A stretch of 64,000 bases of DNA, taken from positions 186,001-250,000 of the IMG/VR virus record IMGVR_UViG_3300027899_000001, one strand, 5' to 3'. The notes below the pieces were generated by a model that saw only the letters and a list, made by a program, of their open reading frames with translations, ran no database searches and was not told where the DNA came from. The position numbers and the translations under genes were made by a program. Shown here one piece after another: positions 38,905 through 60,500 of the stretch. How positions within the stretch are numbered: position 1 is the first letter of the stretch; each line of letters starts with the position of its first letter.

Positions 38905-38918
38905 ATATATAAAATAAA
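38905..38918 (+). promoter_or_regulatory. Putative late promoter motif (copy 5)
   Basis: Exact motif between the hairpin and the ATG at 38928. Confidence 0.6.
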
Positions 38919-38927
38919 AAGTATTTA

Positions 38928-39290
38928 ATGATAAAGGATATTTATATACGCTCTGTAGACGATCCCAATTTTCAATACGGTGTTTTAGAACATTCAGATG
39001 CAATAGAATCAATTATCGCAAAAATAAAAATGTTATTTGGAACTCGTCCTGGACAAGTAATGGGTGATATCGCATTTGGATTAGGTATAGAAGATTTAAT
39101 TTTTGAAACACGCGTAAATAAAATTCAATTAGAAGAAAAAATAAAATCCCAATTTGATATTTATATATCAGAAACAAAAGATTTTAAAATAACGCCTACA
39201 GTTTCATTTGGACGTGCTGATGGATATGATTATGCTATTATAGATGTTTTTGTAGATGATCAAAGATTGATAGGAATATTAGTTAAATAA
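38928..39290 (+). CDS. Baseplate wedge subunit, gp25-like, 120 aa
   Basis: IKMLFGTRPGQVMGDIAFGLGIEDLIFE matches the gp25 T..GE....P.FG..L..LLFE pattern; size and context fit. Confidence 0.75.
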   Translation: MIKDIYIRSVDDPNFQYGVLEHSDAIESIIAKIKMLFGTRPGQVMGDIAFGLGIEDLIFETRVNKIQLEEKIKSQFDIYISETKDFKITPTVSFGRADGYDYAIIDVFVDDQRLIGILVK

Positions 39291-39565
39291 TGAAAGCAAA
39301 AAGAGTATTTGAAAAATTTGAAGAAGGAACTGATCCTATTGATGATATGAACATAGGAAAGGTAGTATGTCCTTATTGTAAAGGCCATGGATATACAGAT
39401 GAACACGATCCTCTTTGTTATGATCCAAGAACAGGAGAACATGATTGTTATGGATGTCCTATACAAGTTCCATATGATTATTGCAATGGAACTGGAGAAA
39501 TATTAAAAAAGGATATTGCTAGACATCAAGCAGAAGAACAAAATTGGGACGATTTGCCCTTTTAA
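39290..39565 (+). CDS. Tagged small Zn-finger protein with SSB-like C-terminal tail, 91 aa
   Basis: MKAKRVFEKFEEGTDPIDDMNIG; CPYCKGHG, CYGCP, YCNGTG; ends WDDLPF. Confidence 0.65.
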   Translation: MKAKRVFEKFEEGTDPIDDMNIGKVVCPYCKGHGYTDEHDPLCYDPRTGEHDCYGCPIQVPYDYCNGTGEILKKDIARHQAEEQNWDDLPF

Positions 39566-39581
39566 AAATAAAATATAAAAA

Positions 39582-40286
39582 ATGGAATATTTTGTATATA
39601 TAACAACCAATTTAATTAACGGAAAACAATATGTTGGAGAACATTCAACTGATAACTTAAAAAAAGATAAGTATTTAGGAAGCGGTAATTTTACAAACGC
39701 AAAAAAGAAATATGGAATACATAATTTTGAAAGAAAAATTCTTGAGTTTTTTCCAACAAAACAAGAAGCATTTGCTGCTCAAGCAAAATATATAATTGAA
39801 TTTAATACATTAGTTCCTAATGGATATAATATAAGCCCAACTGGTGGATGGGGAGCTAGTGGGTGTATTTCAAAGGAAGGAAGATTAAGAATAAGTAAAG
39901 CTAATAAAGGTCATAAAAGATGGTTAGGAAAAACTCATACTGAAGAATCAAAAAAGAGAATGAGTAAATCACACGAAGGAATATTACACACAAAAGAAGC
40001 TAAACAAAAAATAAGTAATTCTACCTCAGGAGAAAAAAATGGAATGTATGGAAAACATCATAATGAAGAAACAAAACAAAAAATAAGAAAAAAGGCTGAA
40101 GGACAAATATGGCCAGAGGAAAGAAAAAAAAGAGTAAGTGAAAAAAATAAAGGAAGAAAATATATAGGTGAATTATATGAAATGAGATATAAAAAAATAG
40201 AATGTCTATACTGTAAAACATTAGTAGATAAAGCTAATTATTCAAGATGGCATGGAGAAAATTGTAAAAAGAAAATAAAAATATAA
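39582..40286 (+). mobile_element. Freestanding GIY-YIG homing endonuclease with NUMOD3-type repeats
   Basis: YFVYITTNLINGKQYVG, YLGSG, GYNI; repeated H(T/N)EE(S/T)K.K(I/M)S motifs. Confidence 0.85.
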
Positions 40287-40287
40287 T

Positions 40288-42186
40288 ATGGAATTATTTC
40301 AGACTACTCGCGTGAGAATGTCAGAGCTTTATCAAGATGCTCTTACATTTATCACAAATACCTATGGAGACCTTGGACAATATTTCACAATGGCTTCTCC
40401 TATGGGACAATTACTTCAAGTAATTCTTCATTATGGAAGAATGATTTTATTTTATGTTGAAGATTCTGTAACTGAATTAAACATTAAAACTGCATCAAGA
40501 CCACAAAGTATAAAAGGTCTTGCAAGTTTAACTGGTCATAATCCTTCAAGAGCTATGGCAGCAAGAGGAACATTAACATTATCATATAATGGTTCTAAAC
40601 TTCCTACATATGCAAATGTAATTTCTATTCTTAATTATACTCAACTTACAAATAGTCAAAATGGCTTAACATATACTATTATTCTTCCGGGACAAGAAAC
40701 ACGATTAGATTTAACAAATATTACAAATTATATTGAAGTTAATATCGTTCAAGGAAAAATAGAATTTCAACAAGCAACTGGAACAGGAGATGCATTACAA
40801 TCATTTAATTTTCAAAATAAAAAGGGTGCATTTATTGATAATTATTACGTAAATGTTTATGTTGATGGAGTTAAATGGGCTATTGTAGATTCTATTTTAG
40901 ACATGACTATACAACAACCTGCAGTTATGGTTAAAACAGGACAAACAGGAGGAATAGACATTTTCTTTGGAAATGGTTATAACGGTGCTGCTCCAAGAAT
41001 GGGTTCAACTATATTAGTTGAACATCTTATTACTGATGGAGAAACTGGAAATATAAACAGTATGACTACTCCTACTACAAATATATGGAAATTTATAACT
41101 AAAGGATATGCACTTAATGGAGAAGAAATTGATATTAATAAATATGTTTCAATTGCAATAAAAAATGATATAATGTTTGGTGCTCAAGAAGAACCGCTTT
41201 ATCTAACAAGATTATTAGCTCCAAATATGTCAAGGAGTTTTGTTCTTGCAAACACAAACAATTATATTTATTTTCTTAGAAGATTAAATATGTTTACTGT
41301 TATAGATGCTATTCCTGGGTTTGCAACATTTGAAGATCAATATACGCTGGACAAATATAATCAAGCTCAAACAACATATGAAAAAATAAGTACAGAATAT
41401 AGAAATTTAACTGCAACATACGGAGTAACTTCAACACAAGCAACTGCTAAAAAAGTTGAATTAGATAATGCTCAACAACAATTATATACTTATCAAGCAG
41501 CACTTGAAAAACAAAAACAAGATGATAATACAGTTTACTTATTTTTAGTTCCTGATATAAATAAAAGAATACAACCCGGAGAAAATTATTATAATTGTAA
41601 TATGGCTGCATTTTCATTATCAGATGGAGAAAAATTAGCAATATTAGATTTAATAGAACAAAGTGGTCAAAGAATTTTAACAGTTGATAATGTAATATTA
41701 GATTTACAATTTCCAAGATTCACTTTAAATATGTCTCTTATATTATGGGAAGGAGCTTCTTTTGATACCGTAAGACAAAATATTATTTCAGCAACTTCTG
41801 ATTATTTTTTACAAAATACAAGAAGAGACAGAATTCCTGTTTCTGATTTAGTAAGAATTATTGAAGGATTAGATGGAGTGGATTCTGTAAATGTATGGTT
41901 TGATGCAGCAAAAGAAAATTTTGATAAAGTATATAAAAATCATTATGGAATTGATGATTATGGTGATATTATTCTTGAAAGATATGTTAAAGATGCATTT
42001 GGAAATGAAGTGTCTATAAAAGATGTATATCCTATTATTAGAGGAGGGTTTGAAAATGTATCTGGCGTATTTTACGAAGATAGTTTAACAAAAAATAAAT
42101 TATCATCATTAAATATTCAAGTTAGAGGCTATACAGCCAAAAACTTAAATTCAGAACATAATATAGCAATTGTTAATAATCTATGA
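40288..42186 (+). CDS. Baseplate wedge subunit, gp6-like, 632 aa
   Basis: ELNIKTASRPQSIKGLASLTGHNPSR, IFFGNG..G..P and Y/HLITDGETGN are gp6/baseplate-J-like motifs; follows the gp25-like gene. Confidence 0.75.
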   Translation: MELFQTTRVRMSELYQDALTFITNTYGDLGQYFTMASPMGQLLQVILHYGRMILFYVEDSVTELNIKTASRPQSIKGLASLTGHNPSRAMAARGTLTLSYNGSKLPTYANVISILNYTQLTNSQNGLTYTIILPGQETRLDLTNITNYIEVNIVQGKIEFQQATGTGDALQSFNFQNKKGAFIDNYYVNVYVDGVKWAIVDSILDMTIQQPAVMVKTGQTGGIDIFFGNGYNGAAPRMGSTILVEHLITDGETGNINSMTTPTTNIWKFITKGYALNGEEIDINKYVSIAIKNDIMFGAQEEPLYLTRLLAPNMSRSFVLANTNNYIYFLRRLNMFTVIDAIPGFATFEDQYTLDKYNQAQTTYEKISTEYRNLTATYGVTSTQATAKKVELDNAQQQLYTYQAALEKQKQDDNTVYLFLVPDINKRIQPGENYYNCNMAAFSLSDGEKLAILDLIEQSGQRILTVDNVILDLQFPRFTLNMSLILWEGASFDTVRQNIISATSDYFLQNTRRDRIPVSDLVRIIEGLDGVDSVNVWFDAAKENFDKVYKNHYGIDDYGDIILERYVKDAFGNEVSIKDVYPIIRGGFENVSGVFYEDSLTKNKLSSLNIQVRGYTAKNLNSEHNIAIVNNL

Positions 42187-42662
42187 AACTAGTTAGAGAA
42201 CATATAAACGAAAAATTTACAGAAAATACTGATTCTATTTGGGATATGGAAATAGGCTTGCCTAAGACAATGAATAATATTATAGAAAAGATATTAGACT
42301 TAGATATGCAAGAAAAATTAATTGAAAGTGGTACTACTAATAAAGGAAATATAAATCATATTATTGTAAGTAAAGGCAATCTTATAATTAGATATTATAG
42401 TAATCCATTTAAAAAAGGAGAAACACTAAAACAAAAAATACGAATAAGAAAACAATATTATATAGATCTTATAAAAAGAGCTGGTATTAGTGACATGGTA
42501 GAGAAGGGCATAGATACTCCTTTAAGATATAGAATAACTTTTAAGATAAAACAACCTTATATTAGATTTTTTCCAGAAGGATATGACTATGATGAACTAG
42601 ATTATGACTACTTTAAAAATGGCAATATAAGAACATATAAAAGTAAATATACAGGAGAATAG
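42183..42662 (+). CDS. Tagged protein (cargo family B), 159 aa
   Basis: MKLVREHINEKFTENTDSIWDMEIG; ATGA overlap with the gp6-like gene. Confidence 0.7.
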   Translation: MKLVREHINEKFTENTDSIWDMEIGLPKTMNNIIEKILDLDMQEKLIESGTTNKGNINHIIVSKGNLIIRYYSNPFKKGETLKQKIRIRKQYYIDLIKRAGISDMVEKGIDTPLRYRITFKIKQPYIRFFPEGYDYDELDYDYFKNGNIRTYKSKYTGE

Positions 42663-49436: not shown

Positions 49437-50060
49437 TTAAATATATTTATGAAGAGTTGCAGATCTGTTATCAATTATCTTTGAGCCCTGAATTAAAATT
49501 TTATTATCATTAATATATTCACGAATATATTTATCTGACATACCAGTGTCAAAGCATATAAAATCCCCCCATATTTCTTGAGGCATATATTCTAAAGACG
49601 TCAATTCTTTATTATGAGATATATTAAAATTATCTTTTATTATTCTTGGACAATTTTTTAAAGATAATAGCTTATTTTCAAAAAGCATTATAGATAATCC
49701 TATTTCTTTTGGTATACCTTCTAATGACGTAAGTTGATTTTTTCCAATATACAAATTAAAATCTACTTTTTTTGGAAATCCTTTAAAATTTTTTAATCCG
49801 CTTTCATACATTGATATTGTGCCGTGAATCTCATTAAATTTAATAAATTCAGGAAATTCTCCATTTGGTAAAGGTATGGCATGAAAATTTATACCTCTTG
49901 CATTAATAGTAAAATCATCATTTATAGTAGGCTCATATACATTTTTCTCATATTTTTCTAGCCATTCTTTAATTAACTTGCGAGATCCTATACCCATATC
50001 TCTTATAGGATCAGAATCTTCTCTAAATTTCTCATTTATGTGTTCTCTTACTATTTTCAT
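49437..50060 (-). CDS. Tagged LRR-like protein, 207 aa
   Basis: MKIVREHINEKFREDSDPIRDMGIG; repeats LKNFKGFPKKV, LTSLEGIPKEI, LLSLKNCPRII, LTSLEYMPQEI. Confidence 0.75.
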   Translation of the reverse strand: MKIVREHINEKFREDSDPIRDMGIGSRKLIKEWLEKYEKNVYEPTINDDFTINARGINFHAIPLPNGEFPEFIKFNEIHGTISMYESGLKNFKGFPKKVDFNLYIGKNQLTSLEGIPKEIGLSIMLFENKLLSLKNCPRIIKDNFNISHNKELTSLEYMPQEIWGDFICFDTGMSDKYIREYINDNKILIQGSKIIDNRSATLHKYI

Positions 50061-50377
50061 TGTATTAAATATCTTTCATTCATATCTACACGATAAACAA
50101 CATAACTATTATCATAAAAATTTACCCTTTCACCGCCATTATAACTTTCAAAACTATCTATAATACAAGAACGTTTTTTACCTCCAATAAATACACCTGT
50201 TATTTTTTTACCTTTTAAAGAATTTAAAAAATCCAACCACGAAGATAACCAAAAATTATTACCGCTTACATAATATTTAGAACGTTCTTCTTCAAAATTA
50301 ATACCTCCTATTCCCAGATCATGTATAGGATCTGATTCTTCTTTGAATAATTCATTTATATGTTCTCTTACTATCAC
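50057..50377 (-). CDS. Tagged hypothetical protein, ~106 aa
   Basis: Likely GTG start at 50377 overlapping the upstream TAG: (M)IVREHINELFKEESDPIHDLGIG. Confidence 0.7.
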   Translation of the reverse strand: MIVREHINELFKEESDPIHDLGIGGINFEEERSKYYVSGNNFWLSSWLDFLNSLKGKKITGVFIGGKKRSCIIDSFESYNGGERVNFYDNSYVVYRVDMNERYLIQ

Positions 50378-51183
50378 TAATTCCAATTTATTTTTATAGT
50401 ATATTTAAATCTACGATATCCATTTGGATAACTTTTTATAAATTCTTTAGAATGTTCTATACTTTTTATTGAATTAAAAACATTTAAATATTCAGTTTTT
50501 GGTGCGAACGCCCAACGAGATGAAAAGAGGCCAGAAGATATTTTATAACGTTGTTCTGATAAATACTCCATCATTCCAGATTCTTTTAACCAATAATCTA
50601 CATTATTTTTAAACGCAACATTATATGGAGGATATTCCACAGCAATTTGAAGATTACTTCCATCTATCTCATATTTATATAAATTTATAAAATGGTGGTC
50701 TGTCATTAAATCTGTAAACTTCTGCAGTGAATCTTCAATAGCTTTTCGTATTCCTATTCCTAAATCATATACTGGGTCAGATTCTTCTGAGAATTTTTCA
50801 TTTAGATTGCGATTCCATGTCTTATACCCCATTTTTTCTAATTTATTGAAAAGTTTTGTTATTACAAATGATGTAGTTTGGTCAAATCCTTTCATAGAAG
50901 GTATTTTAATATATTTACTAACATATTTACATAAATCTTCATATTTATCGTTATCTAAATGGTCTTGTGCTGTAAATTCTTTAAAAGACTTTGTATATAT
51001 TTTTAGAATATTATCTGGAATTTTATTAGTTTTATAAATAATAGGAATTACTTTTAATAAAAAATCTGCAGCGCCTTCTAACGTATCAAACGATCTTTCT
51101 ACATAAATACCAATTCCTAAATCACGAATAGGATCTGATTCTTCTATAAATTTCTCATTTATATGTTCTCTTACTATTTTCAT
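50377..51183 (-). CDS. Two-module tagged polyprotein, 268 aa
   Basis: N-terminal tag plus internal LNEKFSEESDPVYDLGIG at 50752-50805. Confidence 0.75.
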   Translation of the reverse strand: MKIVREHINEKFIEESDPIRDLGIGIYVERSFDTLEGAADFLLKVIPIIYKTNKIPDNILKIYTKSFKEFTAQDHLDNDKYEDLCKYVSKYIKIPSMKGFDQTTSFVITKLFNKLEKMGYKTWNRNLNEKFSEESDPVYDLGIGIRKAIEDSLQKFTDLMTDHHFINLYKYEIDGSNLQIAVEYPPYNVAFKNNVDYWLKESGMMEYLSEQRYKISSGLFSSRWAFAPKTEYLNVFNSIKSIEHSKEFIKSYPNGYRRFKYTIKINWN

Positions 51184-51524
51184 CTTTCAAATCCCATCTT
51201 TTTAAATCTCTCCATTAATAGCTCTGGCCAATAATATACTCTACATGCCTGCTCTCCTGTAGAAATTCCTTCAAACGAAATATATTCTGTTAAAAATTTT
51301 TGTATAATTAAAAAATATGTATGATTTATAGCTCCACCATATCTTAAAATATCATCAGGAATTTTTGATGTTTTTAAAAGTTGCGGAATAATAGTTATTA
51401 AATAATCTAAAAATTTGTCTACATTTACAAAATCTCGATGCGCATATAATCCAATATTCATATCTCTTATGGGATCCGATTCTTCTTTGAATGCTTCATA
51501 TATATGTTCTCTAACTAATTTCAT
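51180..51524 (-). CDS. Tagged protein (cargo family A), 114 aa
   Basis: MKLVREHIYEAFKEESDPIRDMNIG; IP....T.KIPD.I...Y...KMG motif shared with paralogs. Confidence 0.75.
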   Translation of the reverse strand: MKLVREHIYEAFKEESDPIRDMNIGLYAHRDFVNVDKFLDYLITIIPQLLKTSKIPDDILRYGGAINHTYFLIIQKFLTEYISFEGISTGEQACRVYYWPELLMERFKKMGFER

Positions 51525-52705: not shown

Positions 52706-53554
52706 ATGAATCATCAAAAAATTTATGAAGCTATAATAACTAAAGCAAAACTAGAAAATAGAAAAAAACTTATAAAAAATAATTTAAATTATATATATTA
52801 TGAAAATCATCATATAATTCCTCGATGCTTAGACGGAACAAATGATGAATATAATTTAGTTTTATTAACTGCTAAAGAACACTATATATGTCATAAATTA
52901 TTAACTTATATTTATAAAGGAAACAGAAAAATTGCGTGTGCATTTTATCGAATGGCCTTTAATAAAAAAGAAAAATACAAAATTTCATCAAGAGACTATG
53001 CATATGCAAGAGAACTAATTAGTAATACTCCTGTATCAGAAGAAACAAGAAAAAAAATAAGTAAAAAAAGCAAAGAACATAAAACATTTTTAGGAAAAAA
53101 ACATACAGAAGAATCTAAGAAAAAAATAGGATTAGCACAAAAAAATAAAATTGTTTCAGCGAAAACTAAACAAAAACAAAGAGAAGCTAATTTAGGAGAA
53201 AAAAATCCGATGTATAAAAAATGCAGTCATTTTAAAGGAACCCATTTATCTGAAGAAAAAAAGAACCACTTAAGGAATTTATATTTAGGAAAAACCCTTG
53301 AAGAATTATATGGAAAAGAACGTGCAAAAGAAATAAAACAAAAAAATAGTAAAAATAATAAAGGAAAAAATTTAGGAAAAATAAAATCAAAACAAGAGCG
53401 AAAAATTATATCAGATTCTGTTAAAGAATATTATAAGTCTTCTAAAGCTAAAATAAAAACTAGTGAAACTACAAAATTAGCAATGCAAAGACCAGAGGTT
53501 AAAGAGAAACAAAAATTAGCATGGATAAAACGAAAAGAAAACAAACAATTATAA
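52706..53554 (+). mobile_element. Freestanding HNH homing endonuclease (T4 Mob-like) with NUMOD3-type repeats
   Basis: YYENHHIIPRCLDGTNDEYNLVLLTAKEHYICHKLL; Lys-rich HTEESKKKI repeats. Confidence 0.85.
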
Positions 53555-56500
53555 AGATGGTAAAGGCCACTGACCTGGAAAACCATATGTTTTCGCACCA
53601 GTTGGCACAAAATCTTTATATAAAAATTTTAACCAAGCAATATTAGTAGGCCTAAGTAATTGATAACTTGGAAAAGGATCGTTTGTAGTAATCAATGACA
53701 TCGATGCTATTAGAGTATTTTTATATGCTTTATAATCAAGAACAGTGCCTTTCAATTTAGTTTCATAGTTAGAAGATAAAAGATCTGCGTTTTTTAGTTT
53801 AAATTTATCTGTTATATTATTTAATACATTATAATTTATATTATCATCCAAATCACCTGCAATATTTATTACTGGTTTAGGATTTTTTGCAGTTAATCCA
53901 AAATTTGCTGTGTCTGGGCTTATCGCTATAGGTAATGCAGCAATACTTTTATTAACATTATCAGCCATAGAATTTAAAGTATTCATTTGATTGTTAATAG
54001 ATTTTTCTGTTGAATCTAAAGAACTTGTAATACCTTTTACTGATTTGCCTCCTGAATATGCATCTCGTAAAATAGCATATTCAGTTTGATATTTCCATAA
54101 TTTTCCACTTTCGGTTGCTATTGCTTCATAATATATTGCAACGCCTTCAACCCAATTTCCATACGCTTTCGCATATTCTAAAGACGTTGTTGTATATTTT
54201 GTAGGTTTATTAGCTTTAAGATTTTTAAGTTCACTTTTTAATCTTTTAACAGTTTCTTTAGATTTATCTACATTTTCTTTAGCTTTATCCATAAGGGGTT
54301 TTATGCTAATTTTTTTCAAATTTGCTATCTGATCCGATATTTCTTTTTTGAGTGCTTGTATTTCATTTTTTAATGCAATCGTAGGATCTCCAAACGGCGT
54401 TACAAAATTTGTATTAAGATTTACAAATAAACTCCAAGGAAATAAATAAATTCCGCATATAGTTAATCCCAATAATATAACTCCATAAGACGTACTTATG
54501 GGTTTTATTGGAACATACACAACTGGAAAAGGAATGGGGGTTGGAAATATCCAGCCTGTTGACCAACCCATTGCAGGATTTGTTACACTTGCTAATGTAG
54601 CATATGAACAATATTTTAACCAATATTGAATATCACCATATCCATATTTTGATTTAGGATTCATATAAGGATCAATTTCTTCTGATTCACAGGTTCTTGG
54701 TTCTGCAATTGAATATAATCTTGCTTGTTTTCCGTTATATTCTGTAATAGAATATGTAGTAAACATGGAAATACTATCAATAAGTTTTTGCAATTCTTCT
54801 ATTTCTACAGGCAATTTTAAATATTCTTTCCATAGAGCTTCAACAAACGTAAAAAGATAATTTCCTTCTTTAACAGTTTCTGTTCGTTGTGTAGTTTCTT
54901 TTTTAATTAAATTATATTTTTTAACTATCGTATCAGCATTTAAATATAATTCGAATAAAAACATAACTCTATTAACAGCAATTAATTTATCATTTCCTTC
55001 CAATTTTCTATTATCATTTGCCAATCCCATTAACCAAGATTTAAGATCAGATAATTTTTTATTTTGTGAATAAACAGCCATCGCTTTTTTAAACCAATCA
55101 CCCAATGATAATCCTTTTTCAATTTCTTTTATTCCTTCATTTATTTTTTGTGCAAGTTTATCTTTATTGTATCCATCAAGAACATATCTTTTTCTTATAA
55201 ATTCATTTATTTTATCTCGTATTTCTATTTCTAATTTAGTTGGATTTTCTATACCATTAAATACTGGACCTAAATTTAATGAATAATATTCAAATAAATC
55301 ATATTCATTTGATTTAGCTTTTGTTAACTTAGCAGCATTTTGTGCCATATCTCTTAAGAGATTTAAATGTTTATAAAATTTTTCGTCTTCTGTTTCTATT
55401 TGTTTTTTTATTTCATTTAATGTTTCATTTTTTGCATGTTTTTCAACATTATCTTGTCCAGCTATTTGTTTAATTTTATTATCGTGTTCTTCATTAATTA
55501 AATTATATGTTAATAATAATCCTGCATATTGTTTGTTAATTCCTGTATATTGATCATGAGTAGATGCATCATCTACAATAGAAATTGACAACATTATAGG
55601 ATATAGTGTTTTAATATAATAATATTTTAAAAATACTTTTGCACTGTTTAAAGTTGCATATTTTTCATTCAAAGAATTAATTAATGATGTTAAGTAATCT
55701 TCAGGAGGCTCCGATATATCTCTAAGAACTATTTTATTGGTAGTTATTTCATCTATGTATCCTGGAATAGGAGAAAAAATAGATTGTGTTCCTAAATTAG
55801 CAATTTTAGTCTTTTGATCTACAAAAGAATCTTTAGGAAGAAATGAAATTAATGCATCAGTTTTTCTATTATTTTGTATAATAGCCATAGTAACTAAATC
55901 CTCATTAACTGTAGCTTCAACTGTAGTTTCTTCGTTTTGAATAATTTCACATGATGTATTTTTTAATCTTTCTTCCAATGGTCTGTGTGGCACGATGACA
56001 TCATCGATGACGACTGGACAATTAAAAGTCGATGTAAAAGGAATCTTATTAATAGAAACATTAAATGGCTCAAAATCACTCTGACATATAGCATCTGTAG
56101 CTATCACTTTTAAAGTTTGAGAAGAGTGTTTATGTAATTTTTTTCTATTAATTAAATATAATGAAGTTATTACTGTAATTGCTATTAAAATATCATCAAT
56201 ATTTTTAAAAGAATTCATTAAATCTTCAAATTGTTTTTTAGTTGAAGATAATCTTTTATCTGTTGAATCTTTTATTTCTTCGTATTCACTTTTTATTAAT
56301 GCATATGTATTACGAATTAATTTTTGAATATATTTGGTTCTATATTTTGAGGGATGAACAGTTTTAGTTAATAAATCTTTAGTCATATCAACATTATGTT
56401 GAAGTAAATATTTATATGTTTGTAGTTTTTCTTGAAATTGATTTGTTTGTAGTTTCAATGCTTCTTTCTCAGCATTTATTCCTTCTTTAATATTTATGTC

Positions 56501-57001
56501 TTTAATAAAATTGTATGTTAAATATGCTCCAGCAGCAATAACTAATGCTGAATTAATTTGTAATTTTAATTGTTGCACTTTATTTTTATTAATTTCTTTT
56601 TCTATATTATTTAAACTGCTTATCGTATTTAAGATTTCTGGCGCAGTTAAATTATCATTTAGAATAGGAATATTATCTATTGATGCTTCATTATGACATG
56701 CTAATAATATTTGTGATAAATTTGAATTGTCGATTTCTTTAGCTGTAAACTTTAATATTGTTTTTGCTCTTATATCAGTTCTTAAAAATTTTGCAGTATC
56801 TTCTTTACTATATCCACCTTTTAAAATCTTACTAAGTATTAATGCTAAAGCTGCCATGGCAGCTATTTTTAATAAATCTATTTTCTTAGGAATACTCGCA
56901 AATAATTTTTCTAATTCCAAATTAATTTTAAATTTGGCATCAGCTTTAGCCATTTCTGTTTTTTTCTTGACTAATAATTTTGCTTTATTTAATAATCCCA
57001 T
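53549..57001 (-). CDS. Large helical protein with hydrophobic segments, 1150 aa, function unknown
   Basis: Coiled-coil-like stretches and four hydrophobic segments; same operon as the gp5-like gene. Confidence 0.5.
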   Translation of the reverse strand: MGLLNKAKLLVKKKTEMAKADAKFKINLELEKLFASIPKKIDLLKIAAMAALALILSKILKGGYSKEDTAKFLRTDIRAKTILKFTAKEIDNSNLSQILLACHNEASIDNIPILNDNLTAPEILNTISSLNNIEKEINKNKVQQLKLQINSALVIAAGAYLTYNFIKDINIKEGINAEKEALKLQTNQFQEKLQTYKYLLQHNVDMTKDLLTKTVHPSKYRTKYIQKLIRNTYALIKSEYEEIKDSTDKRLSSTKKQFEDLMNSFKNIDDILIAITVITSLYLINRKKLHKHSSQTLKVIATDAICQSDFEPFNVSINKIPFTSTFNCPVVIDDVIVPHRPLEERLKNTSCEIIQNEETTVEATVNEDLVTMAIIQNNRKTDALISFLPKDSFVDQKTKIANLGTQSIFSPIPGYIDEITTNKIVLRDISEPPEDYLTSLINSLNEKYATLNSAKVFLKYYYIKTLYPIMLSISIVDDASTHDQYTGINKQYAGLLLTYNLINEEHDNKIKQIAGQDNVEKHAKNETLNEIKKQIETEDEKFYKHLNLLRDMAQNAAKLTKAKSNEYDLFEYYSLNLGPVFNGIENPTKLEIEIRDKINEFIRKRYVLDGYNKDKLAQKINEGIKEIEKGLSLGDWFKKAMAVYSQNKKLSDLKSWLMGLANDNRKLEGNDKLIAVNRVMFLFELYLNADTIVKKYNLIKKETTQRTETVKEGNYLFTFVEALWKEYLKLPVEIEELQKLIDSISMFTTYSITEYNGKQARLYSIAEPRTCESEEIDPYMNPKSKYGYGDIQYWLKYCSYATLASVTNPAMGWSTGWIFPTPIPFPVVYVPIKPISTSYGVILLGLTICGIYLFPWSLFVNLNTNFVTPFGDPTIALKNEIQALKKEISDQIANLKKISIKPLMDKAKENVDKSKETVKRLKSELKNLKANKPTKYTTTSLEYAKAYGNWVEGVAIYYEAIATESGKLWKYQTEYAILRDAYSGGKSVKGITSSLDSTEKSINNQMNTLNSMADNVNKSIAALPIAISPDTANFGLTAKNPKPVINIAGDLDDNINYNVLNNITDKFKLKNADLLSSNYETKLKGTVLDYKAYKNTLIASMSLITTNDPFPSYQLLRPTNIAWLKFLYKDFVPTGAKTYGFPGQWPLPSL

Positions 57002-57558
57002 TACAATTTAACTTTTATCTCTTGTCTTTGTTTTCCTTTATTATATGTATAAACTACAGTATCAAATTTAACTTTAAAGGGCTTAATTTTTTTTGTGTAT
57101 TTTTTTCCTGTTTTTGGAAGAACATAAGCAAGAGTCATATGAGGATGATAGTCTGGAAAAGATTGAGTATTTGGAAATCTTCTTTCAAGCAAATCATGAT
57201 ACATTTGAAGTTCTTCAGATATAGGAACATCATATTTTACAACATCATAATCATCACATTTAAATATGGAAATTTCTTTAATAGTAGATTCAACAGGTTC
57301 AAAAGTTTTCATAAATTCTTTAACATCATTTGGATCGACTTCATTTAGATGAAGTCCAAATAATAAAGTGCAATGAGGTTTATGTTCTAAACCAAAATCT
57401 TTAAATTCATCATCATAAATATCATCTTTTTCAATAATAGATAAGTGCTCATTCCAGTTTGGAACATCTGCATATAACATAACACAACCATAATCTAATT
57501 TTTTAGATTGCGTTTTTTCTTCTGATAGCCAATTTTTAAAAGTTATAAATTTATGCAT
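57001..57558 (-). CDS. 2H phosphoesterase, T4 gp57B/Acb1-like, with capsid-targeting-like leader, 185 aa
   Basis: Two HxT motifs (PHCTL, PHMTL); SFPDYHPHMTLAY parallels the Acb1 DFDDYTPHITLSY segment as I recall it; leader MHKFITFKNWLSE. Confidence 0.75.
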   Translation of the reverse strand: MHKFITFKNWLSEEKTQSKKLDYGCVMLYADVPNWNEHLSIIEKDDIYDDEFKDFGLEHKPHCTLLFGLHLNEVDPNDVKEFMKTFEPVESTIKEISIFKCDDYDVVKYDVPISEELQMYHDLLERRFPNTQSFPDYHPHMTLAYVLPKTGKKYTKKIKPFKVKFDTVVYTYNKGKQRQEIKVKL

Positions 57559-57955
57559 CTTCCCAGTATTTTTTTAATATTTTTTCATGCTGCTTTTTTC
57601 CTAAATCTGGCAAATCTTCAAACTTTTTAATACCTTGCCGTTTAAATTTTTTAAATTGATATGTATATGCAACTCTTTCTGTATTATTAGTAGGATATTC
57701 TTTACCATCATCTTTAGAACCTTTTTTATATAAAAGATAATGAATTAATTCATGTTTCATCCAATTAAGAGGGTCTTTTTTATAATCATAGTCACTTCTA
57801 ATTCTTACTACATTATCATCAGAATCAAATTCAGTAGGATCATTTTTTCCTTCTGGCCAATCTTCCTTTTTAACTATAACAATAGGTAAATCATAATTAT
57901 CTACTTTAATAAGTCGTGATTCATTTAACCAATTTTTATAACTTTTAAATTTCAT
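57551..57955 (-). CDS. HExxH zincin-like metalloprotein with capsid-targeting-like leader
   Basis: Start probably at the second Met (MKFKSYKNWLNE); KHELIHYL with downstream ExxAY. Confidence 0.6.
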   Translation of the reverse strand: MKFKSYKNWLNESRLIKVDNYDLPIVIVKKEDWPEGKNDPTEFDSDDNVVRIRSDYDYKKDPLNWMKHELIHYLLYKKGSKDDGKEYPTNNTERVAYTYQFKKFKRQGIKKFEDLPDLGKKQHEKILKKYWEDA

Positions 57956-57968: not shown

Positions 57969-58748
57969 TTATACACTTATAAGAACATTAGTTGATAAAA
58001 TAGTTTGTTTAGTTGCTTCAACAAGCCCTACGTTTACTCCAGGTGTTGCCGGAAATTTTTGATCTAAACTTGCAGCCATTGTTGATAATAACGCAATTAA
58101 AGGTTCTCCTCCAACTGCTGTTTGATATGGGCCTGGACCAATTTTAGTTTTTTGACTTCCATTAACTATAACTTCATCAGCAGTAACTTCTGCTAATGCT
58201 GCTGCAGCTATATGAACTTCATTTTTCGTAGTTACATTAATAACATCACCATCCATTTGAATAATTGAATCATTATTAGGAGTTGATAAAGTTATTAACG
58301 TATCTGGTGTTATTTGAATATATGATTCTTTAAAATAAATTTGAAATCCACTTTTAACTTGAAATATAACAGTAAGTTCTTGTTCAGGATCATATAGAAG
58401 AACATGAGTTCCTTGATAATCATCTTTAATTTTTTTAATAAGTTCAGTGTCAATATTTTGAATAGTTGTATATTCTGGCGCATACATATCACCATTATTA
58501 AATTGAATTCTTACAAATTGGCCAACTTTAGGAACAGAAAGAGATCCAGCGCCATCACCGGCAAATATTGTAGAATTTATAGGAACAGCCCATGGTAAAT
58601 ATTTATCTTCTATTCCATCAAATAAACCCAATACTTTAACTTGACATCTTCCTGAAAATGTAGTATCTTTAGTGTTAACTACAATTCCAATCCAGTCATT
58701 ATCGTGATAATCATGTTGAATAAAATCTATATCAGATGTATATGGCAT
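57969..58748 (-). CDS. Baseplate central spike, gp5/gpV OB-fold, 259 aa
   Basis: WIGIVVNTKD...GRCQVKV...LPWA...SVPKVGQFVRIQFNNGD..P.Y; no lysozyme domain. Confidence 0.8.
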   Translation of the reverse strand: MPYTSDIDFIQHDYHDNDWIGIVVNTKDTTFSGRCQVKVLGLFDGIEDKYLPWAVPINSTIFAGDGAGSLSVPKVGQFVRIQFNNGDMYAPEYTTIQNIDTELIKKIKDDYQGTHVLLYDPEQELTVIFQVKSGFQIYFKESYIQITPDTLITLSTPNNDSIIQMDGDVINVTTKNEVHIAAAALAEVTADEVIVNGSQKTKIGPGPYQTAVGGEPLIALLSTMAASLDQKFPATPGVNVGLVEATKQTILSTNVLISV

Positions 58749-58749: not shown

Positions 58750-59451
58750 TTAATGTATTAGTTTATATTTTTGTAATAATTTTATTATTCGTATTCTTCT
58801 ATTTTTTACTTTCCAATAAAGAAGATTACGAGATAAATTAGAATTCACTGTTGCTCCAAGTTTTATAATAAATTCAGCAGTTTTAATTTTTCCATTATAA
58901 CAAGCTGTTGCTAAAGAATTACTTAATACTTCAGGAGTTAATTGTATTCCATTGTCTATTAATAATTGAAGTATATGAACATGATCAGTTTTAGCTGTCA
59001 TATAAAATGCTCTTGAATTTTCTAAGTTTACGTCTGCTCCATGATCTATCATAAATTTAACCATTAAGGAATTACCTTTAGTACAAGCTTGCACAAGAAA
59101 TTTTCCATTAGACATATTTAAATCAACGCCTTCTTCAACTAATATTTTAAGTATTTCTAAATTATTATATACAATTGTGTATCTTAAATAATCACTATCT
59201 TGATAATTACTACGTGTAATAGATTTTTTTGCTTGTCTATATAAATAAGAAACAAATTCAGGTTTATTAGATGATATGCATGCTAATAATTTAGAATGAG
59301 CAGAAGAACTTGCATTTGGATAACTACGGCCGCTTTTTTCAAACCAAGTATTAATAGCGTGTTCCATTCCAATTCCCATATCTTGTATAGGATCGGATTC
59401 TTCTGAAAATTTTTCATTTATCCATTTTCTATATGCTGAAAATTTTGTCAT
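58750..59451 (-). CDS. Tagged ankyrin-repeat protein, 233 aa
   Basis: MTKFSAYRKWINEKFSEESDPIQDMGIG; ANK motifs (LKILVEEGVDLN, VKFMIDHGADVN, AEFIIKLGATVN). Confidence 0.8.
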   Translation of the reverse strand: MTKFSAYRKWINEKFSEESDPIQDMGIGMEHAINTWFEKSGRSYPNASSSAHSKLLACISSNKPEFVSYLYRQAKKSITRSNYQDSDYLRYTIVYNNLEILKILVEEGVDLNMSNGKFLVQACTKGNSLMVKFMIDHGADVNLENSRAFYMTAKTDHVHILQLLIDNGIQLTPEVLSNSLATACYNGKIKTAEFIIKLGATVNSNLSRNLLYWKVKNRRIRIIKLLQKYKLIH

Positions 59452-59453: not shown

Positions 59454-60500
59454 TTAAAATAATTCATATTTTTTTAATAAGTCATAAACTCTTATTCTTC
59501 TACGTTGTTGAGACCATTTTTTCAATAACATTTTTAAAAGACTATTTACTTTTGCGCCTTTTTCTACTAAAAATTCTATCATTTTCAAATCTCCTCTGTC
59601 ACAAGCACTAGTTAATGCAGCATCTAAAATTTCTTTATCTATATCTATATTATCTAACAGATATTGTATAACATTTTTATGTCCAGCATTAACTGCTACT
59701 AAAAATAAATCTCTATTATATCCAATGCCAGTATTTGCGCCATTGTTAATTAAATATTCTAACATAGGTATATTGTCATATACCGTTGTATTTCTAAGTA
59801 TACAAGGATTTGCATTTACATTTGCTCCTGCTTCAACTAACATTTTAACTATTTCAAAGTTATTATAATTTACTGCTGTTTCTAAATAATCACCATAATT
59901 ATAATTTAAATTAGGAACTTTTGGTATAAGATATTTAACGAATTCTATTTTATTATCTACAATACTTTGTCTTAATCTTGAGCGAATATCATTAAAATAT
60001 AAAGGATATAATTTATCTCTAAAATAATCATCCATTATTCTTTCAATTCCAATACCCATATCATGAACTGGATCTGATTCTTCTTTAAATTTTTCATTTA
60101 CTGACGTATTTGGCGAAATGTTTGTATGATATTTACTATTTAATAATTTAATAACTTGTTCAACCATATCTATTACTTTAATATTTTCCCATTCATGACT
60201 ATATGCGTTTTCAGTATGTTCGAATGCATTTTTAAATGCTATATTATCATTTGCGTTAATTGTCAGTTCTTTTAAAGTAAAATAAAGAAGCATAACACAT
60301 ATAGTTTTTTCAGCATCTGTTTTCTTTTTATCTCGAAAATTTTTATTATAGAACGTTGTTGTACTTATAGGCCCCATTCTTTTTATTTCCTCTTTCCATA
60401 AATTTTGTAAATAAGGACGGCCTATACCCAAATCTTTTATTGGATCAGATTGATCAGAAAACTTTTCATTTAACCATTTTCTATATGCGTAGAATTTCAT
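59454..60500 (-). CDS. Two-module tagged polyprotein, second module ankyrin repeats, 348 aa
   Basis: N-terminal tag; internal VNEKFKEESDPVHDMGIG at 60048-60101; VKMLVEAGANVN, IEFLVEKGAKVN. Confidence 0.8.
   Translation of the reverse strand: MKFYAYRKWLNEKFSDQSDPIKDLGIGRPYLQNLWKEEIKRMGPISTTTFYNKNFRDKKKTDAEKTICVMLLYFTLKELTINANDNIAFKNAFEHTENAYSHEWENIKVIDMVEQVIKLLNSKYHTNISPNTSVNEKFKEESDPVHDMGIGIERIMDDYFRDKLYPLYFNDIRSRLRQSIVDNKIEFVKYLIPKVPNLNYNYGDYLETAVNYNNFEIVKMLVEAGANVNANPCILRNTTVYDNIPMLEYLINNGANTGIGYNRDLFLVAVNAGHKNVIQYLLDNIDIDKEILDAALTSACDRGDLKMIEFLVEKGAKVNSLLKMLLKKWSQQRRRIRVYDLLKKYELF

What the first reader, a model, noticed from the sequence alone, without database searches (positions are those of the whole stretch)
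57001..57558. Acb1-like anti-CBASS phosphodiesterase with a capsid-targeting-like leader
Seen: two HxT motifs and a 13-aa extension MHKFITFKNWLSE resembling the leaders of its neighbours (MKFKSYKNWLNE, MTKFSAYRKWINE); it sits in the spike operon. Established: T4 Acb1 (gp57B) is a 2H phosphoesterase that degrades cyclic-nucleotide immune signals. Inference: the enzyme may be pre-loaded in the head and act on entry, which would support reading the leader-bearing genes as a counter-defence payload.
Basis: partly seen in the sequence, partly recalled or inferred. Interest (0 to 1): 0.75.

Follow-up and report, generated by a model that had tools for sequence, protein, structure and literature searches.

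The report
Phage 2H phosphodiesterase with capsid-targeting-type leader
A giant freshwater phage encodes, among its tail-spike genes, a small phosphodiesterase of the kind some viruses use to destroy bacterial alarm nucleotides; it starts with a short tag, shared with unrelated neighbouring genes, that looks like phage T4's signal for packing proteins into the virus head, so the enzyme may be delivered ready-made with the DNA.

Summary
Window 57001-57558 (-) encodes a 185-aa 2H phosphoesterase. Both His-x-Thr motifs (H62/T64, H140/T142) are invariant in 47 aligned homologues, and the AlphaFold model is confident.

Residues 1-13 (MHKFITFKNWLSE) lie outside the fold. Its three best N-terminal matches among 128 other genes of the phage record are three unrelated neighbours: a zincin-like HExxH protein and two ankyrin proteins.

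The Acb1 label is only partly supported. Pfam Acb1 scores below its threshold, PDB fold searches cannot separate Acb1, LigT, Usb1 and poxvirus cGAMP PDE, and the nearest viral models are another phage 2H clade. The substrate is unknown.

The leader reading is strengthened. About 105 of 111 homologues keep a hydrophobic-x-Glu about 8 residues before the first strand, and position P3 is Leu/Ile in 81 of 86. That is the I/LxE specificity of T4 prohead protease, and the leader resembles T4's MKTYQEFIAE. The leader's flavour co-varies with non-2H proteins of the same genome. The phage has a T4-type prohead protease with its catalytic His and Ser.

Packaging and cleavage remain untested. Rivals are an N-terminal catalytic lid (as in PDE-9), tail loading, and a plain late cytoplasmic enzyme.

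The parts
57001..57558 (-). Gene for a 185-aa 2H phosphoesterase of a phage-specific 'YGCxML' clade
   Evidence: ORF. Pfam 2_5_RNA_ligase2 38.1 bits (GA 27), Acb1 24.7 bits (below GA 27). 112 homologue clusters. AF2 model pLDDT 89.6. 2H fold at Z 12-14.6.
57520..57558 (-). Leader, residues 1-13 (MHKFITFKNWLSE), ending in L-S-E
   Evidence: Lies outside the fold: pLDDT is below 50 for residues 1-20, and structural alignments start at residues 19-22. Shared with three neighbours. Conserved across the family with E14 in at least 90% of sequences, and P3 is L/I in 81 of 86.
57367..57375 (-). First catalytic motif, H62-C-T64
   Evidence: Read. H62 and T64 are invariant in alignment A1.
57133..57141 (-). 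Second catalytic motif, H140-M-T142, inside PDYHPHMTLAY
   Evidence: Read. H140 and T142 are invariant. This is the only stretch that aligns with true Acb1 by hhalign.
57551..57955 (-). Upstream neighbour: 134-aa zincin-like protein (HELIH...E) with the same leader, MKFKSYKNWLNE
   Evidence: H68, E69, H72 and E93 are invariant and leader residue E12 is at least 90% conserved in 15 homologues. AF2 pLDDT 90. Most of the top 50 VIA matches are zinc metallopeptidases, but all are weak (best Z 5.5, VgrG2b effector domain; ArdC 4.8).
57969..58748 (-). gp5-type OB-fold baseplate spike or hub gene
   Evidence: Pfam Phage_base_V E 8.4e-9. PHROG 37871 and 430, baseplate hub.
58750..59451 (-). 233-aa ankyrin-repeat protein with a two-part leader, MTKFSAYRKWINE-KFSEESDPIQDMGIG
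   Evidence: Pfam Ank_2 E 2e-23. Leader.
59454..60500 (-). 348-aa ankyrin-repeat protein with a two-part leader and a second, internal copy (..VNEKFKEESDPVHDMGIG..)
   Evidence: Pfam Ank_2 E 8e-17. Sequence. Leader.
53549..57001 (-). 1150-aa protein directly downstream (start overlaps the 2H stop codon); function unknown, has hydrophobic segments
   Evidence: ORF. No Pfam or PHROG hit. The order spike, then 2H, then a protein of about 1130-1170 aa is kept in L006 and L019; in L017 the same position is held by a gene cut by the contig end.
60497..62653 (-). 718-aa protein of the same co-oriented, overlapping gene string; part of the conserved hub module
   Evidence: ORF. Counterparts of 597, 715 and 476 aa with the same N-terminal sequence in L006, L017 and L019.
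49437..51524 (-). Three consecutive genes (114, 268 and 207 aa) that start MK(L/I)VREHI(N/Y)E-(K/A)FxE(E/D)SDPIRD(M/L)xIG: the long form of the leader
   Evidence: No Pfam family.
33974..42662 (+). Stretch holding four more long-leader genes (33974-35332, 37498-38871, 39290-39565, 42183-42662) among tail and baseplate-like genes
   Evidence: No Pfam family.

Best explanation
The gene encodes a small 2H (His-x-Thr twice) phosphoesterase of a phage-specific clade. It is related to, but not a member of, the T4 Acb1 family.

Shown:
- The fold and the intact catalytic motifs.
- A 13-residue N-terminal leader that is not part of the fold.
- The same leader on three unrelated neighbouring proteins.
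- Conservation of a hydrophobic-x-x-hydrophobic-(L/I)-x-E leader throughout the 2H clade.
- A T4-type prohead protease in the same phage record.
- A fixed gene position between the spike gene and a gene of about 1150 aa in relatives down to 42% identity.

Inferred mechanism:
1. The protein is made late, together with the baseplate hub and spike genes.
2. The leader acts like the T4 capsid-targeting sequence and takes the protein into the assembling prohead.
3. The prohead protease clips the leader after Glu13 (L-S-E|E).
4. The mature enzyme, about 20 kDa, travels in the virion and is ejected with the DNA.
5. In the next host cell it hydrolyses a nucleotide messenger or an RNA end as soon as infection starts. 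Candidates are cyclic di- or trinucleotides of CBASS or type III CRISPR, 2'-5' oligoadenylates, and 2',3'-cyclic phosphate ends.

The leader-bearing neighbours (a zincin-like peptidase and the ankyrin proteins) would be co-delivered cargo.
For: - **Enzyme.** Pfam 2_5_RNA_ligase2 scores 38.1 bits, above its cut-off. H62/T64 and H140/T142 are invariant. The AF2 model has pLDDT 89.6, and every 2H family in the PDB matches at Z 11-14.6.
- **Leader detached from the fold.** pLDDT is below 50 for residues 1-20, and alignments start at residues 19-22.
- **Leader is modular.** The three top-scoring N-termini in the record belong to the zincin-like and ankyrin neighbours, and the strict motif is expected 0.0003 times at N-termini. 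Conservation is at protein level, because codons and upstream DNA differ.
- **Family-wide conservation.** 86 of 111 homologues carry the strict leader, and all but about six carry hydrophobic-x-E. P3 is L in 57, I in 24 and V in 5. The Glu lies a median 8 residues before strand 1.
- **Match to T4.** IPII and IPIII start MKTYQEFIAE, and gp21 cleaves after Glu in I/LxE (PMC12991175). A distant 2H homologue starts MKKLPTFQEFINE, and five small unrelated neighbours in that contig start the same way.
- **Flavour co-varies with the genome.** The 2H leader scores 23, 17 and 15 against non-2H leaders of its own genome in three lineages. Overall the mean is 16.1 within a lineage and 3.8 between lineages.
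- **Protease present.** Peptidase_S77 scores 61 bits, with GELDHP and SISSR aligned to the catalytic His85 and Ser140 of T4 gp21 (residues named in PMC12991175). A gp23-type capsid protein is also present.
- **Late structural context kept.** The gene order is the same in L006, L017 and L019.
- **Precedent.** 2H domains are fused to MuF or portal proteins in phage polyvalent proteins (PMC5512222). BFVD matches include such large structural proteins.
- **Anti-defence neighbour.** A 36%-identical family member directly adjoins a Tad3 Thoeris inhibitor, E 1.6e-34.
Against: - There is no direct evidence of packaging or cleavage, and no cultured relative with a virion proteome was found.
- Distant family members with leaders lie in replication or early-type gene modules, and in three contigs no neighbour shares the leader. 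There the extension could have another role.
- N-terminal extensions of about 15 residues act as catalytic lids in phage PDE-9 and in the penguinpox PDE, and lids are also modelled with low confidence (bioRxiv 10.1101/2025.08.21.671373).
- Most leader-bearing proteins of this phage also carry a second conserved block (KFxEESDPIxDMGIG) that the 2H enzyme lacks. If that block is the real targeting element, the 2H enzyme may not be targeted.
- The gene's position next to the spike would fit tail loading as well as head loading.
- The alignment of the capsid protein with T4 gp23 shows no conserved I/LxE site at the T4 position.
- Some viral 2H structural groups cleave none of 18 tested messengers, so the substrate is open.
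- The Maribacter phage Molly homologue has no leader although that phage has an S77-like protease.
Confidence: 0.45

Rival explanations
1. The N-terminal extension is a catalytic lid of the 2H enzyme, not a targeting signal. It would fold over the bound nucleotide, as the 15 N-terminal residues of phage PDE-9 (PDB 9Q2G/9Q2Y) and the N-terminal lid of the penguinpox cGAMP PDE do. The enzyme would work in the cytoplasm.
For: An N-terminal lid is shown for PDE-9, and the same paper says lids are modelled with low confidence (bioRxiv 10.1101/2025.08.21.671373). The extension is conserved in almost the whole 2H clade, including contigs where no neighbour shares it. The best Foldseek PDB match is the penguinpox PDE, and its VIA alignment starts at model residue 12.
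Against: The same 12-13 residues head a zincin-like protein and two ankyrin proteins that have no 2H active site. In another lineage, five small non-2H neighbours carry that lineage's version of the leader. Leader flavour follows the genome rather than the enzyme. The near-invariant (L/I)-x-E fits a protease site.
Confidence: 0.2
2. The leader loads the enzyme and its neighbours into the tail or baseplate (tube lumen or hub, with the spike and the 1150-aa protein) rather than into the head. This would resemble the N-terminal loading signals of payloads of contractile injection systems, or cargo carried by VgrG spikes.
For: The gene order spike, cargo genes, 2H, then a large gene of about 1150 aa where complete is kept down to 42% identity. 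The genes overlap as if translationally coupled. The zincin-like neighbour's best structural match, though weak, is the effector domain of VgrG2b (Z 5.5).
Against: The leader's form matches the T4 head-targeting sequence and the I/LxE protease site. At least 14 further leader-bearing genes are scattered over the record, not only at the spike. Distant leader-bearing 2H genes lie far from tail genes. No loading signal of this form is known to me for phage tails (own knowledge).
Confidence: 0.15
3. The enzyme is an ordinary cytoplasmic enzyme made late. The shared N-termini are a by-product of gene shuffling, through recombination at conserved 5' ends or duplication of a 5' cassette, and have no targeting role. 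Late expression could suit an enzyme that counters defences triggered by late phage proteins.
For: T4 prohead protease activity triggers a CBASS system late in infection (PMC12991175), so late expression alone could be adaptive. T4 Acb1 itself lies next to the internal-protein gene ipI without being known as a virion protein (own knowledge).
Against: Codons and upstream DNA of the four leaders differ, so conservation is at protein level. The motif is kept across 112 clusters down to 35% identity, with a fixed distance to strand 1. It is always at the extreme N-terminus.
Confidence: 0.1
4. On the question of substrate only: the enzyme is not an anti-CBASS nuclease. It would be an RNA-end enzyme, either a 2',3'-cyclic phosphodiesterase for RNA repair or a Usb1-like RNase or 2'-5' phosphodiesterase.
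For: The best VIA matches are human Usb1 (Z 14.6), plant CPDase (13.6) and LigT (13.4), ahead of Acb1 (12.5). Pfam's best model is 2_5_RNA_ligase2. PMC5512222 proposed RNase or 2'-5' phosphodiesterase roles for phage 2H domains fused to MuF or portal proteins. Two viral 2H groups cleaved none of 18 messengers.
Against: No RNA ligase was found in the 133-kb record, which is about a third of the genome, nor within 10 kb of any of the nine homologues inspected on other contigs. The Z-score differences are too small to decide. One family member adjoins Tad3, an anti-defence gene. 46 of 47 members also match the Acb1 model at E <= 0.01.
Confidence: 0.3

Closest known systems
T4 Acb1 (gp57B; Pfam PF23474; PDB 7T26/7T27)
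   Same: Both are small single-domain phage 2H phosphoesterases with two HxT motifs. The second motif region is alike (PDYHPHMTLAY against DDYTPHITLSY in T4; hhalign probability 94.6% over 51 columns). In T4 the gene lies directly next to an internal-protein gene with a capsid-targeting sequence (ipI) and a few kb from gene 5.
   Different: The Pfam score is below threshold (24.7 against 27). There is no alignment over the first half. The protein is about 30 residues longer and has its own conserved blocks (YGCVML, DIY, GLExxPH). No C-terminal lid sequence is seen. Acb1-labelled models rank only 23rd and 41st in BFVD. True Acb1 proteins have only about 8 residues before strand 1 and no (L/I)xE site. 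Activity was not tested.
[quoted passage not shown]
   Same: It sits at the extreme N-terminus, is 10-13 residues long, follows the pattern M-K-..-aromatic-x-x-aromatic-(I/L)-x-E, and occurs on several unrelated proteins of one phage. The genome encodes an S77 protease.
   Different: This lineage has K-N-W in place of Q-E-F. Most bearers here add a second conserved block (KFxEESDPIxDMGIG) after the Glu, which T4 lacks. Here the signal sits on an enzyme family (2H) that keeps it over wide divergence. Targeting and cleavage are not shown.
Phage 2H PDE-9 of Burkholderia phage BCSR5 (PDB 9Q2G/9Q2Y) and the penguinpox cGAMP PDE (9BKQ/9CIW)
   Same: They are viral 2H phosphodiesterases with an N-terminal extension of about 15 residues that predictions model poorly.
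   Different: In those enzymes the extension is a lid that closes over the ligand. Here the same extension is shared with non-2H proteins and ends in a protease-type site. The sequence relation is weak (E 0.04 with the family profile).
2H domains fused to MuF or portal proteins in phage 'polyvalent proteins' (Iyer et al. 2017, PMC5512222)
   Same: A 2H phosphoesterase predicted to travel in the virion and act on entry against host nucleotide-based defences or RNA.
   Different: There the link to the virion is a covalent fusion to a head protein. Here it would be a short removable leader on a stand-alone enzyme.
Ejection or inner-body proteins of giant phages (phiKZ, 201phi2-1, SPN3US), processed by a T4-related prohead protease
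   Same: Both involve a large phage with many head-internal proteins whose N-terminal propeptides are removed after Glu (PMC5694885).
   Different: Those propeptides are long and not a common short motif, and the cleavage motif is (A/S/G)xE rather than (L/I)xE.

Membership tests
2H phosphoesterase superfamily | Two His-x-Thr/Ser motifs | tested here: met
   H62-C-T64 and H140-M-T142, invariant in 47 homologues.
2H phosphoesterase superfamily | Two-lobed alpha+beta 2H fold | tested here: met
   AF2 pLDDT 89.6. VIA Z 10-14.6 to Usb1, CPDase, LigT, Acb1, VP3 and AKAP18 over 130-160 residues.
2H phosphoesterase superfamily | Sequence-family threshold | tested here: met
   Pfam PF13563 scores 38.1 bits against a cut-off of 27.
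Acb1 (PF23474) | Score over Pfam's gathering threshold | tested here: not met
   24.7 bits against 27. 46 of 47 family members match at E <= 0.01, best 3.9e-8.
Acb1 (PF23474) | Full-length profile similarity to bona fide Acb1 | tested here: not met
   hhalign aligns only 51 columns around the second HxT motif. The family profile scores 7T26 at E 0.033.
Acb1 (PF23474) | Nearest structural neighbours are Acb1 proteins | tested here: not met
   In BFVD, Acb1-labelled models rank 23 and 41 (TM about 0.43), while other phage 2H proteins reach TM 0.68-0.84. In the PDB, Acb1 scores Z 12.5, below Usb1, CPDase and LigT.
Acb1 (PF23474) | Short C-terminal lid that orders over the ligand | tested here: inconclusive
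   The modelled C-terminus is a beta hairpin (E156-174, E177-184). No counterpart of the T4 lid residues 145-152 was aligned.
Acb1 (PF23474) | Hydrolysis of 3'3'-cGAMP and other CBASS signals, and rescue from CBASS | not testable with these tools
   This needs enzyme assays and infection assays.
T4-type capsid-targeting sequence (CTS) | Extreme N-terminal peptide of 10-13 residues of the form aromatic-x-x-aromatic/hydrophobic-(I/L)-x-E | tested here: met
   MHKFITFKNWLSE compared with T4 MKTYQEFIAE. In the family, P3 is L/I in 81 of 86 and the Glu is at least 90% conserved.
T4-type capsid-targeting sequence (CTS) | Carried by several unrelated proteins of the same phage | tested here: met
   It heads a zincin-like protein and two ankyrin proteins here. 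The same holds in L006, L008, L007 and L018, and the flavour co-varies by genome.
T4-type capsid-targeting sequence (CTS) | The phage encodes a gp21-type (S77) prohead protease with its catalytic His and Ser | tested here: met
   PF03420 scores 61 bits at G000:C1:199-615. GELDHP and SISSR align with T4 gp21.
T4-type capsid-targeting sequence (CTS) | The leader directs the protein into the prohead and is removed there | not testable with these tools
   This needs virion mass spectrometry or reporter fusions. The complex prediction of protease with the 2H protein gave no verdict.
LigT-type RNA-repair 2H enzymes | Linked to an RNA ligase or polynucleotide kinase | tested here: not met
   No PF09414 RNA ligase in the 133-kb record, which is a third of the genome. 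None within 8-10 kb of the nine homologues inspected on other contigs.
2H PDEs with an N-terminal lid (PDE-9 type) | N-terminal extension of about 15 residues that closes over the active site | tested here: inconclusive
   An extension is present, but it is modelled as a free helix at pLDDT below 50. The N-terminal sequence of PDE-9 could not be retrieved for comparison.

The most novel reading that the evidence does not exclude
A widespread clade of stand-alone phage 2H phosphodiesterases (at least 112 clusters at 90% identity) carries a T4-type capsid-targeting and protease-cleavage leader and is delivered pre-made in virions. This giant freshwater phage would use a two-part leader (hydrophobic-x-x-hydrophobic-(I/L)-N-E plus KFxEESDPIxDMGIG) on at least 16 of its roughly 130 genes in this fragment. 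Those genes include a zincin-like peptidase, ankyrin proteins and the 2H enzyme, so the phage would pack a diverse counter-defence payload into its head. If so, packaged cargo could be read directly from phage sequence.
Probability: 0.35. Interest if true: 0.8.

Novelty: new variant of a known kind. Interest (0 to 1): 0.6.

Why it matters
Enzymes that destroy bacterial alarm nucleotides are known as proteins the phage makes after entry. A version carried in the virion would act before any phage gene is expressed, which changes how signalling defences such as CBASS, type III CRISPR, Thoeris-like systems or Panoptes could be beaten or triggered.

If the short leader is validated, it would be a sequence tag that marks injected proteins in uncultured T4-like and giant phages. 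Cargo, and likely many anti-defence proteins, could then be listed from metagenomes alone. The tag would also extend T4's protein-packaging tool to other phages.

The finding also separates this clade from true Acb1, which matters for annotation.

Tried and rejected
- **Complex prediction.** The prohead protease domain (L001:202-720) with the 2H protein gave no verdict, score 0.00. This is not evidence either way.
- **Capsid protein alignment.** Aligning this phage's capsid protein with T4 gp23, to find a conserved I/LxE maturation site, failed because the N-terminal part aligns too poorly to say.
- **Promoter and terminator scans.** The sigma-70 scan and the T4 late-promoter word TATAAATA were uninformative in this 28% GC DNA: 37 found against 27 expected, and none placed tellingly in the operon.
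- **Search for close relatives.** Megablast of the 14-kb operon against isolated phages found nothing. tblastn found only distant homologues, in huge uncultured phages, Maribacter phages Molly and Colly, and Rhodococcus phage Weasels2.
- **Leader against protease presence.** I tried to relate leader presence to the presence of an S77 protease. Molly has the protease at the threshold (27.1 bits) but its 2H gene has no leader, and the metagenome contigs could not be searched whole.
- **PDB searches.** The sequence search with the family profile gave only weak, mixed hits: PH0099 at 3e-3 and Acb1 at 0.03. Fold searches cannot assign a subfamily.
- **ESM Atlas look-ups.** The look-ups for a long-leader protein and for the zincin-like neighbour gave only compositional or unnamed hits.
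- **Phage G.** Its Acb1 homologue was not detected in that phage's proteome and is a different protein from the BFVD hit gp240, so it does not bear on this case.
- **PDE-9 N-terminus.** The first 14 residues were not retrievable, so its lid could not be compared with this leader.
- **Sequencing runs.** Only one DNA run, a freshwater metagenome, holds the region.
- **Alternative genetic code.** None is needed. Table 11 gives 96% coding density.
Full report
**What is there.** Window 57001-57558 on the minus strand is an intact 185-codon ORF with an ATG start. Its start overlaps the stop of the upstream gene by 8 nt, and its stop overlaps the start of the downstream 1150-codon gene by 1 nt. It belongs to a co-oriented string of genes running from 64000 down to 53549. 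That string holds a gp5-type OB-fold spike or hub gene at 57969-58748 (Pfam Phage_base_V E 8e-9; PHROGs 'baseplate hub'). The two HxT motifs are H62-C-T64 (nt 57367-57375) and H140-M-T142 (nt 57133-57141).

**The source genome.** The window comes from a 133-kb viral record, 28% GC, estimated to be one third complete. The same protein also lies on contigs of up to 405 kb. The only sequencing run that holds the region is a freshwater metagenome. The source is therefore a giant freshwater phage. It has a T4-type major capsid protein (Pfam Gp23, 102 bits) and a T4-type prohead protease (Peptidase_S77, 61 bits).

**The enzyme.**
- Pfam places the protein in the 2H superfamily. The score is 38.1 bits for 2_5_RNA_ligase2 (cut-off 27), 24.7 bits for LigT_PEase (cut-off 23.3, no single stretch passing), and 24.7 bits for Acb1 (cut-off 27, so below threshold).
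- A word-indexed search found 112 clusters of homologues, nearly all 175-200 aa.
- In an alignment of 47 of them, H62, T64, H140 and T142 are invariant. So are family-specific positions that true Acb1 lacks: G56, F99, V106, K108, P139, Y145, Y154, and the blocks YGCVML, DIY and GLExxPH.
- AlphaFold2 on this alignment gives a confident model (pLDDT 89.6, pTM 0.81), except for residues 1-20, which fall below 50.
- Foldseek and VIA-align against the PDB find every 2H family at about the same level: Usb1 Z 14.6, plant CPDase 13.6, LigT 13.4, Acb1 12.5, penguinpox cGAMP PDE 12.3, rotavirus VP3 12.0. The fold is certain and the subfamily is not resolved.
- Among predicted viral structures, the nearest are other phage proteins labelled 'cyclic phosphodiesterase-like' or '2'-5' RNA ligase' (TM 0.68-0.84; Maribacter phage Colly, Tenacibaculum phage PTm1, phage G gp240). 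Acb1-labelled models rank only 23rd and 41st.
- A profile-profile comparison with an alignment of true Acb1 proteins (T4, FBB1 and relatives) gives 94.6% probability, but only over 51 columns around the second HxT motif.

I therefore file the protein as a member of the 2H superfamily and of a distinct phage clade. It is not a member of the Acb1 family.

**The substrate is open.** A recent survey showed that viral 2H phosphodiesterases fall into structural groups with different substrate ranges, and that two groups cleaved none of 18 messengers (bioRxiv 10.1101/2025.08.21.671373). Two hints favour an anti-defence role over RNA repair:
- No RNA ligase is present in the record or near any inspected homologue.
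- One family member, 36% identical, directly abuts a Tad3 Thoeris inhibitor gene (E 1.6e-34).

**The leader is real and modular.**
- Residues 1-13, MHKFITFKNWLSE, lie outside the fold. Structural alignments begin at residues 19-22.
- The pattern [FYWLIVM]xx[FYW][KRN][KRNQ]W[LIVM]xE occurs five times in all six frames of the 133-kb record. Four of the five are the N-termini of adjacent genes: the 2H enzyme, a 134-aa HExxH protein (57551-57955, taking ATG 57955 as its start), and ankyrin-repeat proteins of 233 and 348 aa. From composition, 0.0003 such N-termini are expected.
- Scored with BLOSUM62 against the N-termini of 128 other genes, the 2H leader's three best partners are exactly these neighbours (42, 36 and 34, against mean 3.8 and sd 7.5).
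- The codons and the upstream DNA differ among the four genes, so conservation is at protein level.
- The HExxH neighbour is a small zincin-like protein. H68, E69, H72 and E93 are invariant in 15 homologues, which also keep the leader. Its confident model matches mostly zinc metallopeptidases, though all weakly (best Z 5.5, the effector domain of VgrG2b; ArdC 4.8).

**The leader is conserved across the enzyme family.**
- 86 of 111 homologues carry a strict hydrophobic-x-x-hydrophobic-(L/I/V)-x-E leader.
- Most of the rest carry a looser hydrophobic-x-E. Three look like miscalled starts, and one lacks a leader.
- The residue two before the Glu (P3) is Leu in 57, Ile in 24 and Val in 5.
- The Glu lies a median 12 residues from the start and 8 residues before strand 1. 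It is at least 90% conserved in the alignment.

**The leader matches the T4 capsid-targeting sequence.** The T4 internal proteins IPII and IPIII both begin MKTYQEFIAE. This sequence takes them into the scaffolding core (PMC3012670). The prohead protease gp21 cuts after Glu in I/LxE motifs (PMC12991175).

Distant members of the 2H clade have leaders very close to T4's, for example MKKLPTFQEFINE. In that contig (L008), five small unrelated neighbours begin MFKKYHEFLNE, MRNIPSYDEFVNE, MQKFTEFVKE, MKNILTFEGFINE and MKNLKSFEDFVRINE.

**Leader flavour follows the genome.** The flavours are KNW-L-x-E here and in L006, QEF-I-N-E in L008, and LIDLIKE in L007. In each case the non-2H leaders of the same genome share the flavour. 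The 2H leaders score 23, 17 and 15 against non-2H leaders of their own genome; overall the mean is 16.1 within a lineage and 3.8 between lineages. This is a small, hand-collected sample. Such co-variation is what a common partner in each phage, such as a scaffold or protease, would produce. A contact inside the 2H active site would not produce it.

**The protease.** The phage's S77 protease keeps the motifs around the catalytic His and Ser of gp21 (GELDHP, SISSR). It is fused to an extension of about 600 residues rich in charged repeats, which may be scaffold-like.

**Genomic context.** The order spike, optional small leader-bearing genes, 2H, then a large downstream protein (about 1130-1170 aa where complete) is kept in relatives at 61%, 56% and 42% identity (L006, L017, L019). 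In L017 the downstream gene is cut by the contig end. In this lineage, then, the enzyme is a fixed part of a late structural module.

More distant members lie among replication and nucleotide-metabolism genes of T4-like phages (gp32, UvsX-like, DnaB, family B polymerase). In three of those contigs no neighbour shares the leader.

**Most likely mechanism.** Shown: the enzyme class, the detachable modular leader, the protease, and the late structural context. Inferred: the leader takes the protein into the prohead as the T4 CTS does, the protease removes it after Glu13, and the mature enzyme of about 20 kDa is ejected with the DNA and removes a nucleotide signal or processes an RNA end at the very start of infection. 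There is precedent for virion-borne 2H domains. They occur fused to MuF and portal proteins in phage polyvalent proteins (PMC5512222), and BFVD matches include large proteins labelled structural or capsid-morphogenesis. Giant phages pack dozens of protease-processed ejection proteins (PMC5694885). I put this whole chain at about 0.45.

**Rivals.**
1. *Catalytic lid (about 0.2).* Phage PDE-9 and the penguinpox PDE have N-terminal lids of about 15 residues that close over the ligand, and such lids are poorly modelled. This would explain the family-wide conservation. It does not explain the same peptide on ankyrin and zincin-like proteins, nor the co-variation by genome.
2. *Loading into the tail or hub rather than the head (about 0.15).* The conserved position next to the spike favours this. 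The T4-like form of the leader, and leader-bearing genes scattered elsewhere, count against it.
3. *No targeting role (about 0.1).* The enzyme would be a late cytoplasmic protein with a shuffled 5' cassette. Late expression could itself be useful, since prohead protease activity triggers a CBASS system late in T4 infection (PMC12991175).
4. *Different substrate (about 0.3, independent of the leader question).* The substrate may be an RNA end or 2'-5' oligoadenylate rather than a CBASS signal.

**A complication and a wider pattern.** Fourteen genes of the record begin with a longer, two-part leader: M-K-(L/I)-V-R-E-H-I-N-E followed by K-F-x-E-E-S-D-P-I-x-D-(M/L)-G-I-G. The two ankyrin proteins carry the W-flavoured first part plus this second block. 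The 348-aa ankyrin protein has a second, internal copy. The 2H enzyme and the zincin-like protein have only the first part. No Pfam family covers the block. If the second block is the real targeting element, the 2H enzyme might not be targeted. If the first part is the T4-like CTS, as in L008 where no second block exists, then about one gene in eight of this fragment is candidate cargo.

**Novelty and verdict.** The enzyme class, the T4 CTS, and the idea of virion-delivered 2H domains are each known. A removable T4-type leader on a stand-alone 2H phosphodiesterase clade, conserved over 112 clusters and shared with unrelated cargo-like genes, was not described in the library searches I ran. I rate it a new variant of a known kind. 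The 'Acb1-like' label should be loosened to '2H phosphodiesterase of a separate phage clade'.

Noticed in passing
window 33974-35332, 37498-38871, 39290-39565, 42183-42662 (+); 49437-50060, 50377-51183, 51180-51524, 58750-59451, 59454-60500 (-); also G000:C1 41450, 42322, 126587, 128848, 131538: Fourteen genes of the 133-kb record start with a two-part motif, MK(L/I)VREHINE followed by KFxEESDPIxD(M/L)GIG. They range from 91 to 457 aa, are otherwise unrelated, and match no Pfam family. The motif is also present in the related contigs L006 and L018, where a variant reads NFER..DP..T(L/M)(R/K)IG.
   Followed up: partly
window 59454-60500 (-): The 348-aa ankyrin protein carries a second, internal copy of the leader block (..SVNEKFKEESDPVHDMGIG..) about 135 residues in. 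This suggests a fusion of two leader-bearing units, or a second processing site.
   Followed up: no
window 57551-57955 (-): This small zincin-like protein has invariant HELIH..E and carries the leader. Its weak structural matches are nearly all zinc metallopeptidases, led by the VgrG2b effector domain and the ArdC antirestriction protease domain. It is a candidate injected peptidase.
   Followed up: partly
G000:C1:202-2547 (outside the window): The T4-type prohead protease domain (about 170 aa, with His and Ser conserved) is fused to an extension of about 600 aa with repeated NxWTxxIAK-like units. It may be a protease-scaffold fusion.
   Followed up: partly
L005:7953-8411 and 7592-7879 (T4 genes 57B and ipI): T4 Acb1 starts MMEFKDFST, and relatives start MKFQDFS or MNNFKEFS. 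This resembles the start of the adjacent internal protein IPI (MKTFKEFTST) and the first half of the CTS, but without an (I/L)xE site. It may be a vestige or chance.
   Followed up: partly
L013:10554-11150: A Tad3 (type I Thoeris inhibitor) gene, E 1.6e-34, directly follows a leader-bearing 2H homologue (P0088) in a T4-like contig. The pair may form a small anti-defence gene cluster.
   Followed up: partly
window 12289-27297 (-) and 27301-32556 (-): These are giant ORFs of 5002 and 1751 codons. The stretch 28001-32000 has 43% GC against about 28% elsewhere, strong negative GC and AT skews, and many long overlapping ORFs on the other strand. That pattern suggests a repetitive, compositionally odd coding region, perhaps a fibre.
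   Followed up: no
window 52706-53554 (+); G000:C1 37389-38069 and 51271-51918; L017:5991-6776: Paralogous genes start MNHQK(I/V)YE..I...K.ENR and contain ..YYENHHI(I/L)P(R/K)C. They look like HNH-type homing endonucleases. One copy in L017 is inserted on the opposite strand between the spike gene and the genes that precede the 2H gene.
   Followed up: no
window 52159-52596 (+): A small heat-shock protein (Hsp20-like by its sequence) lies just beyond the 1150-aa gene. A Pfam HSP20 gene holds the same position in the related contig L006.
   Followed up: no
L007:6534-7082 and 10001-10558: A 167-kb T4-like contig carries two paralogous leader-bearing 2H genes, both starting MIKLIDLIKE, 3 kb apart in its replication module.
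   Followed up: no
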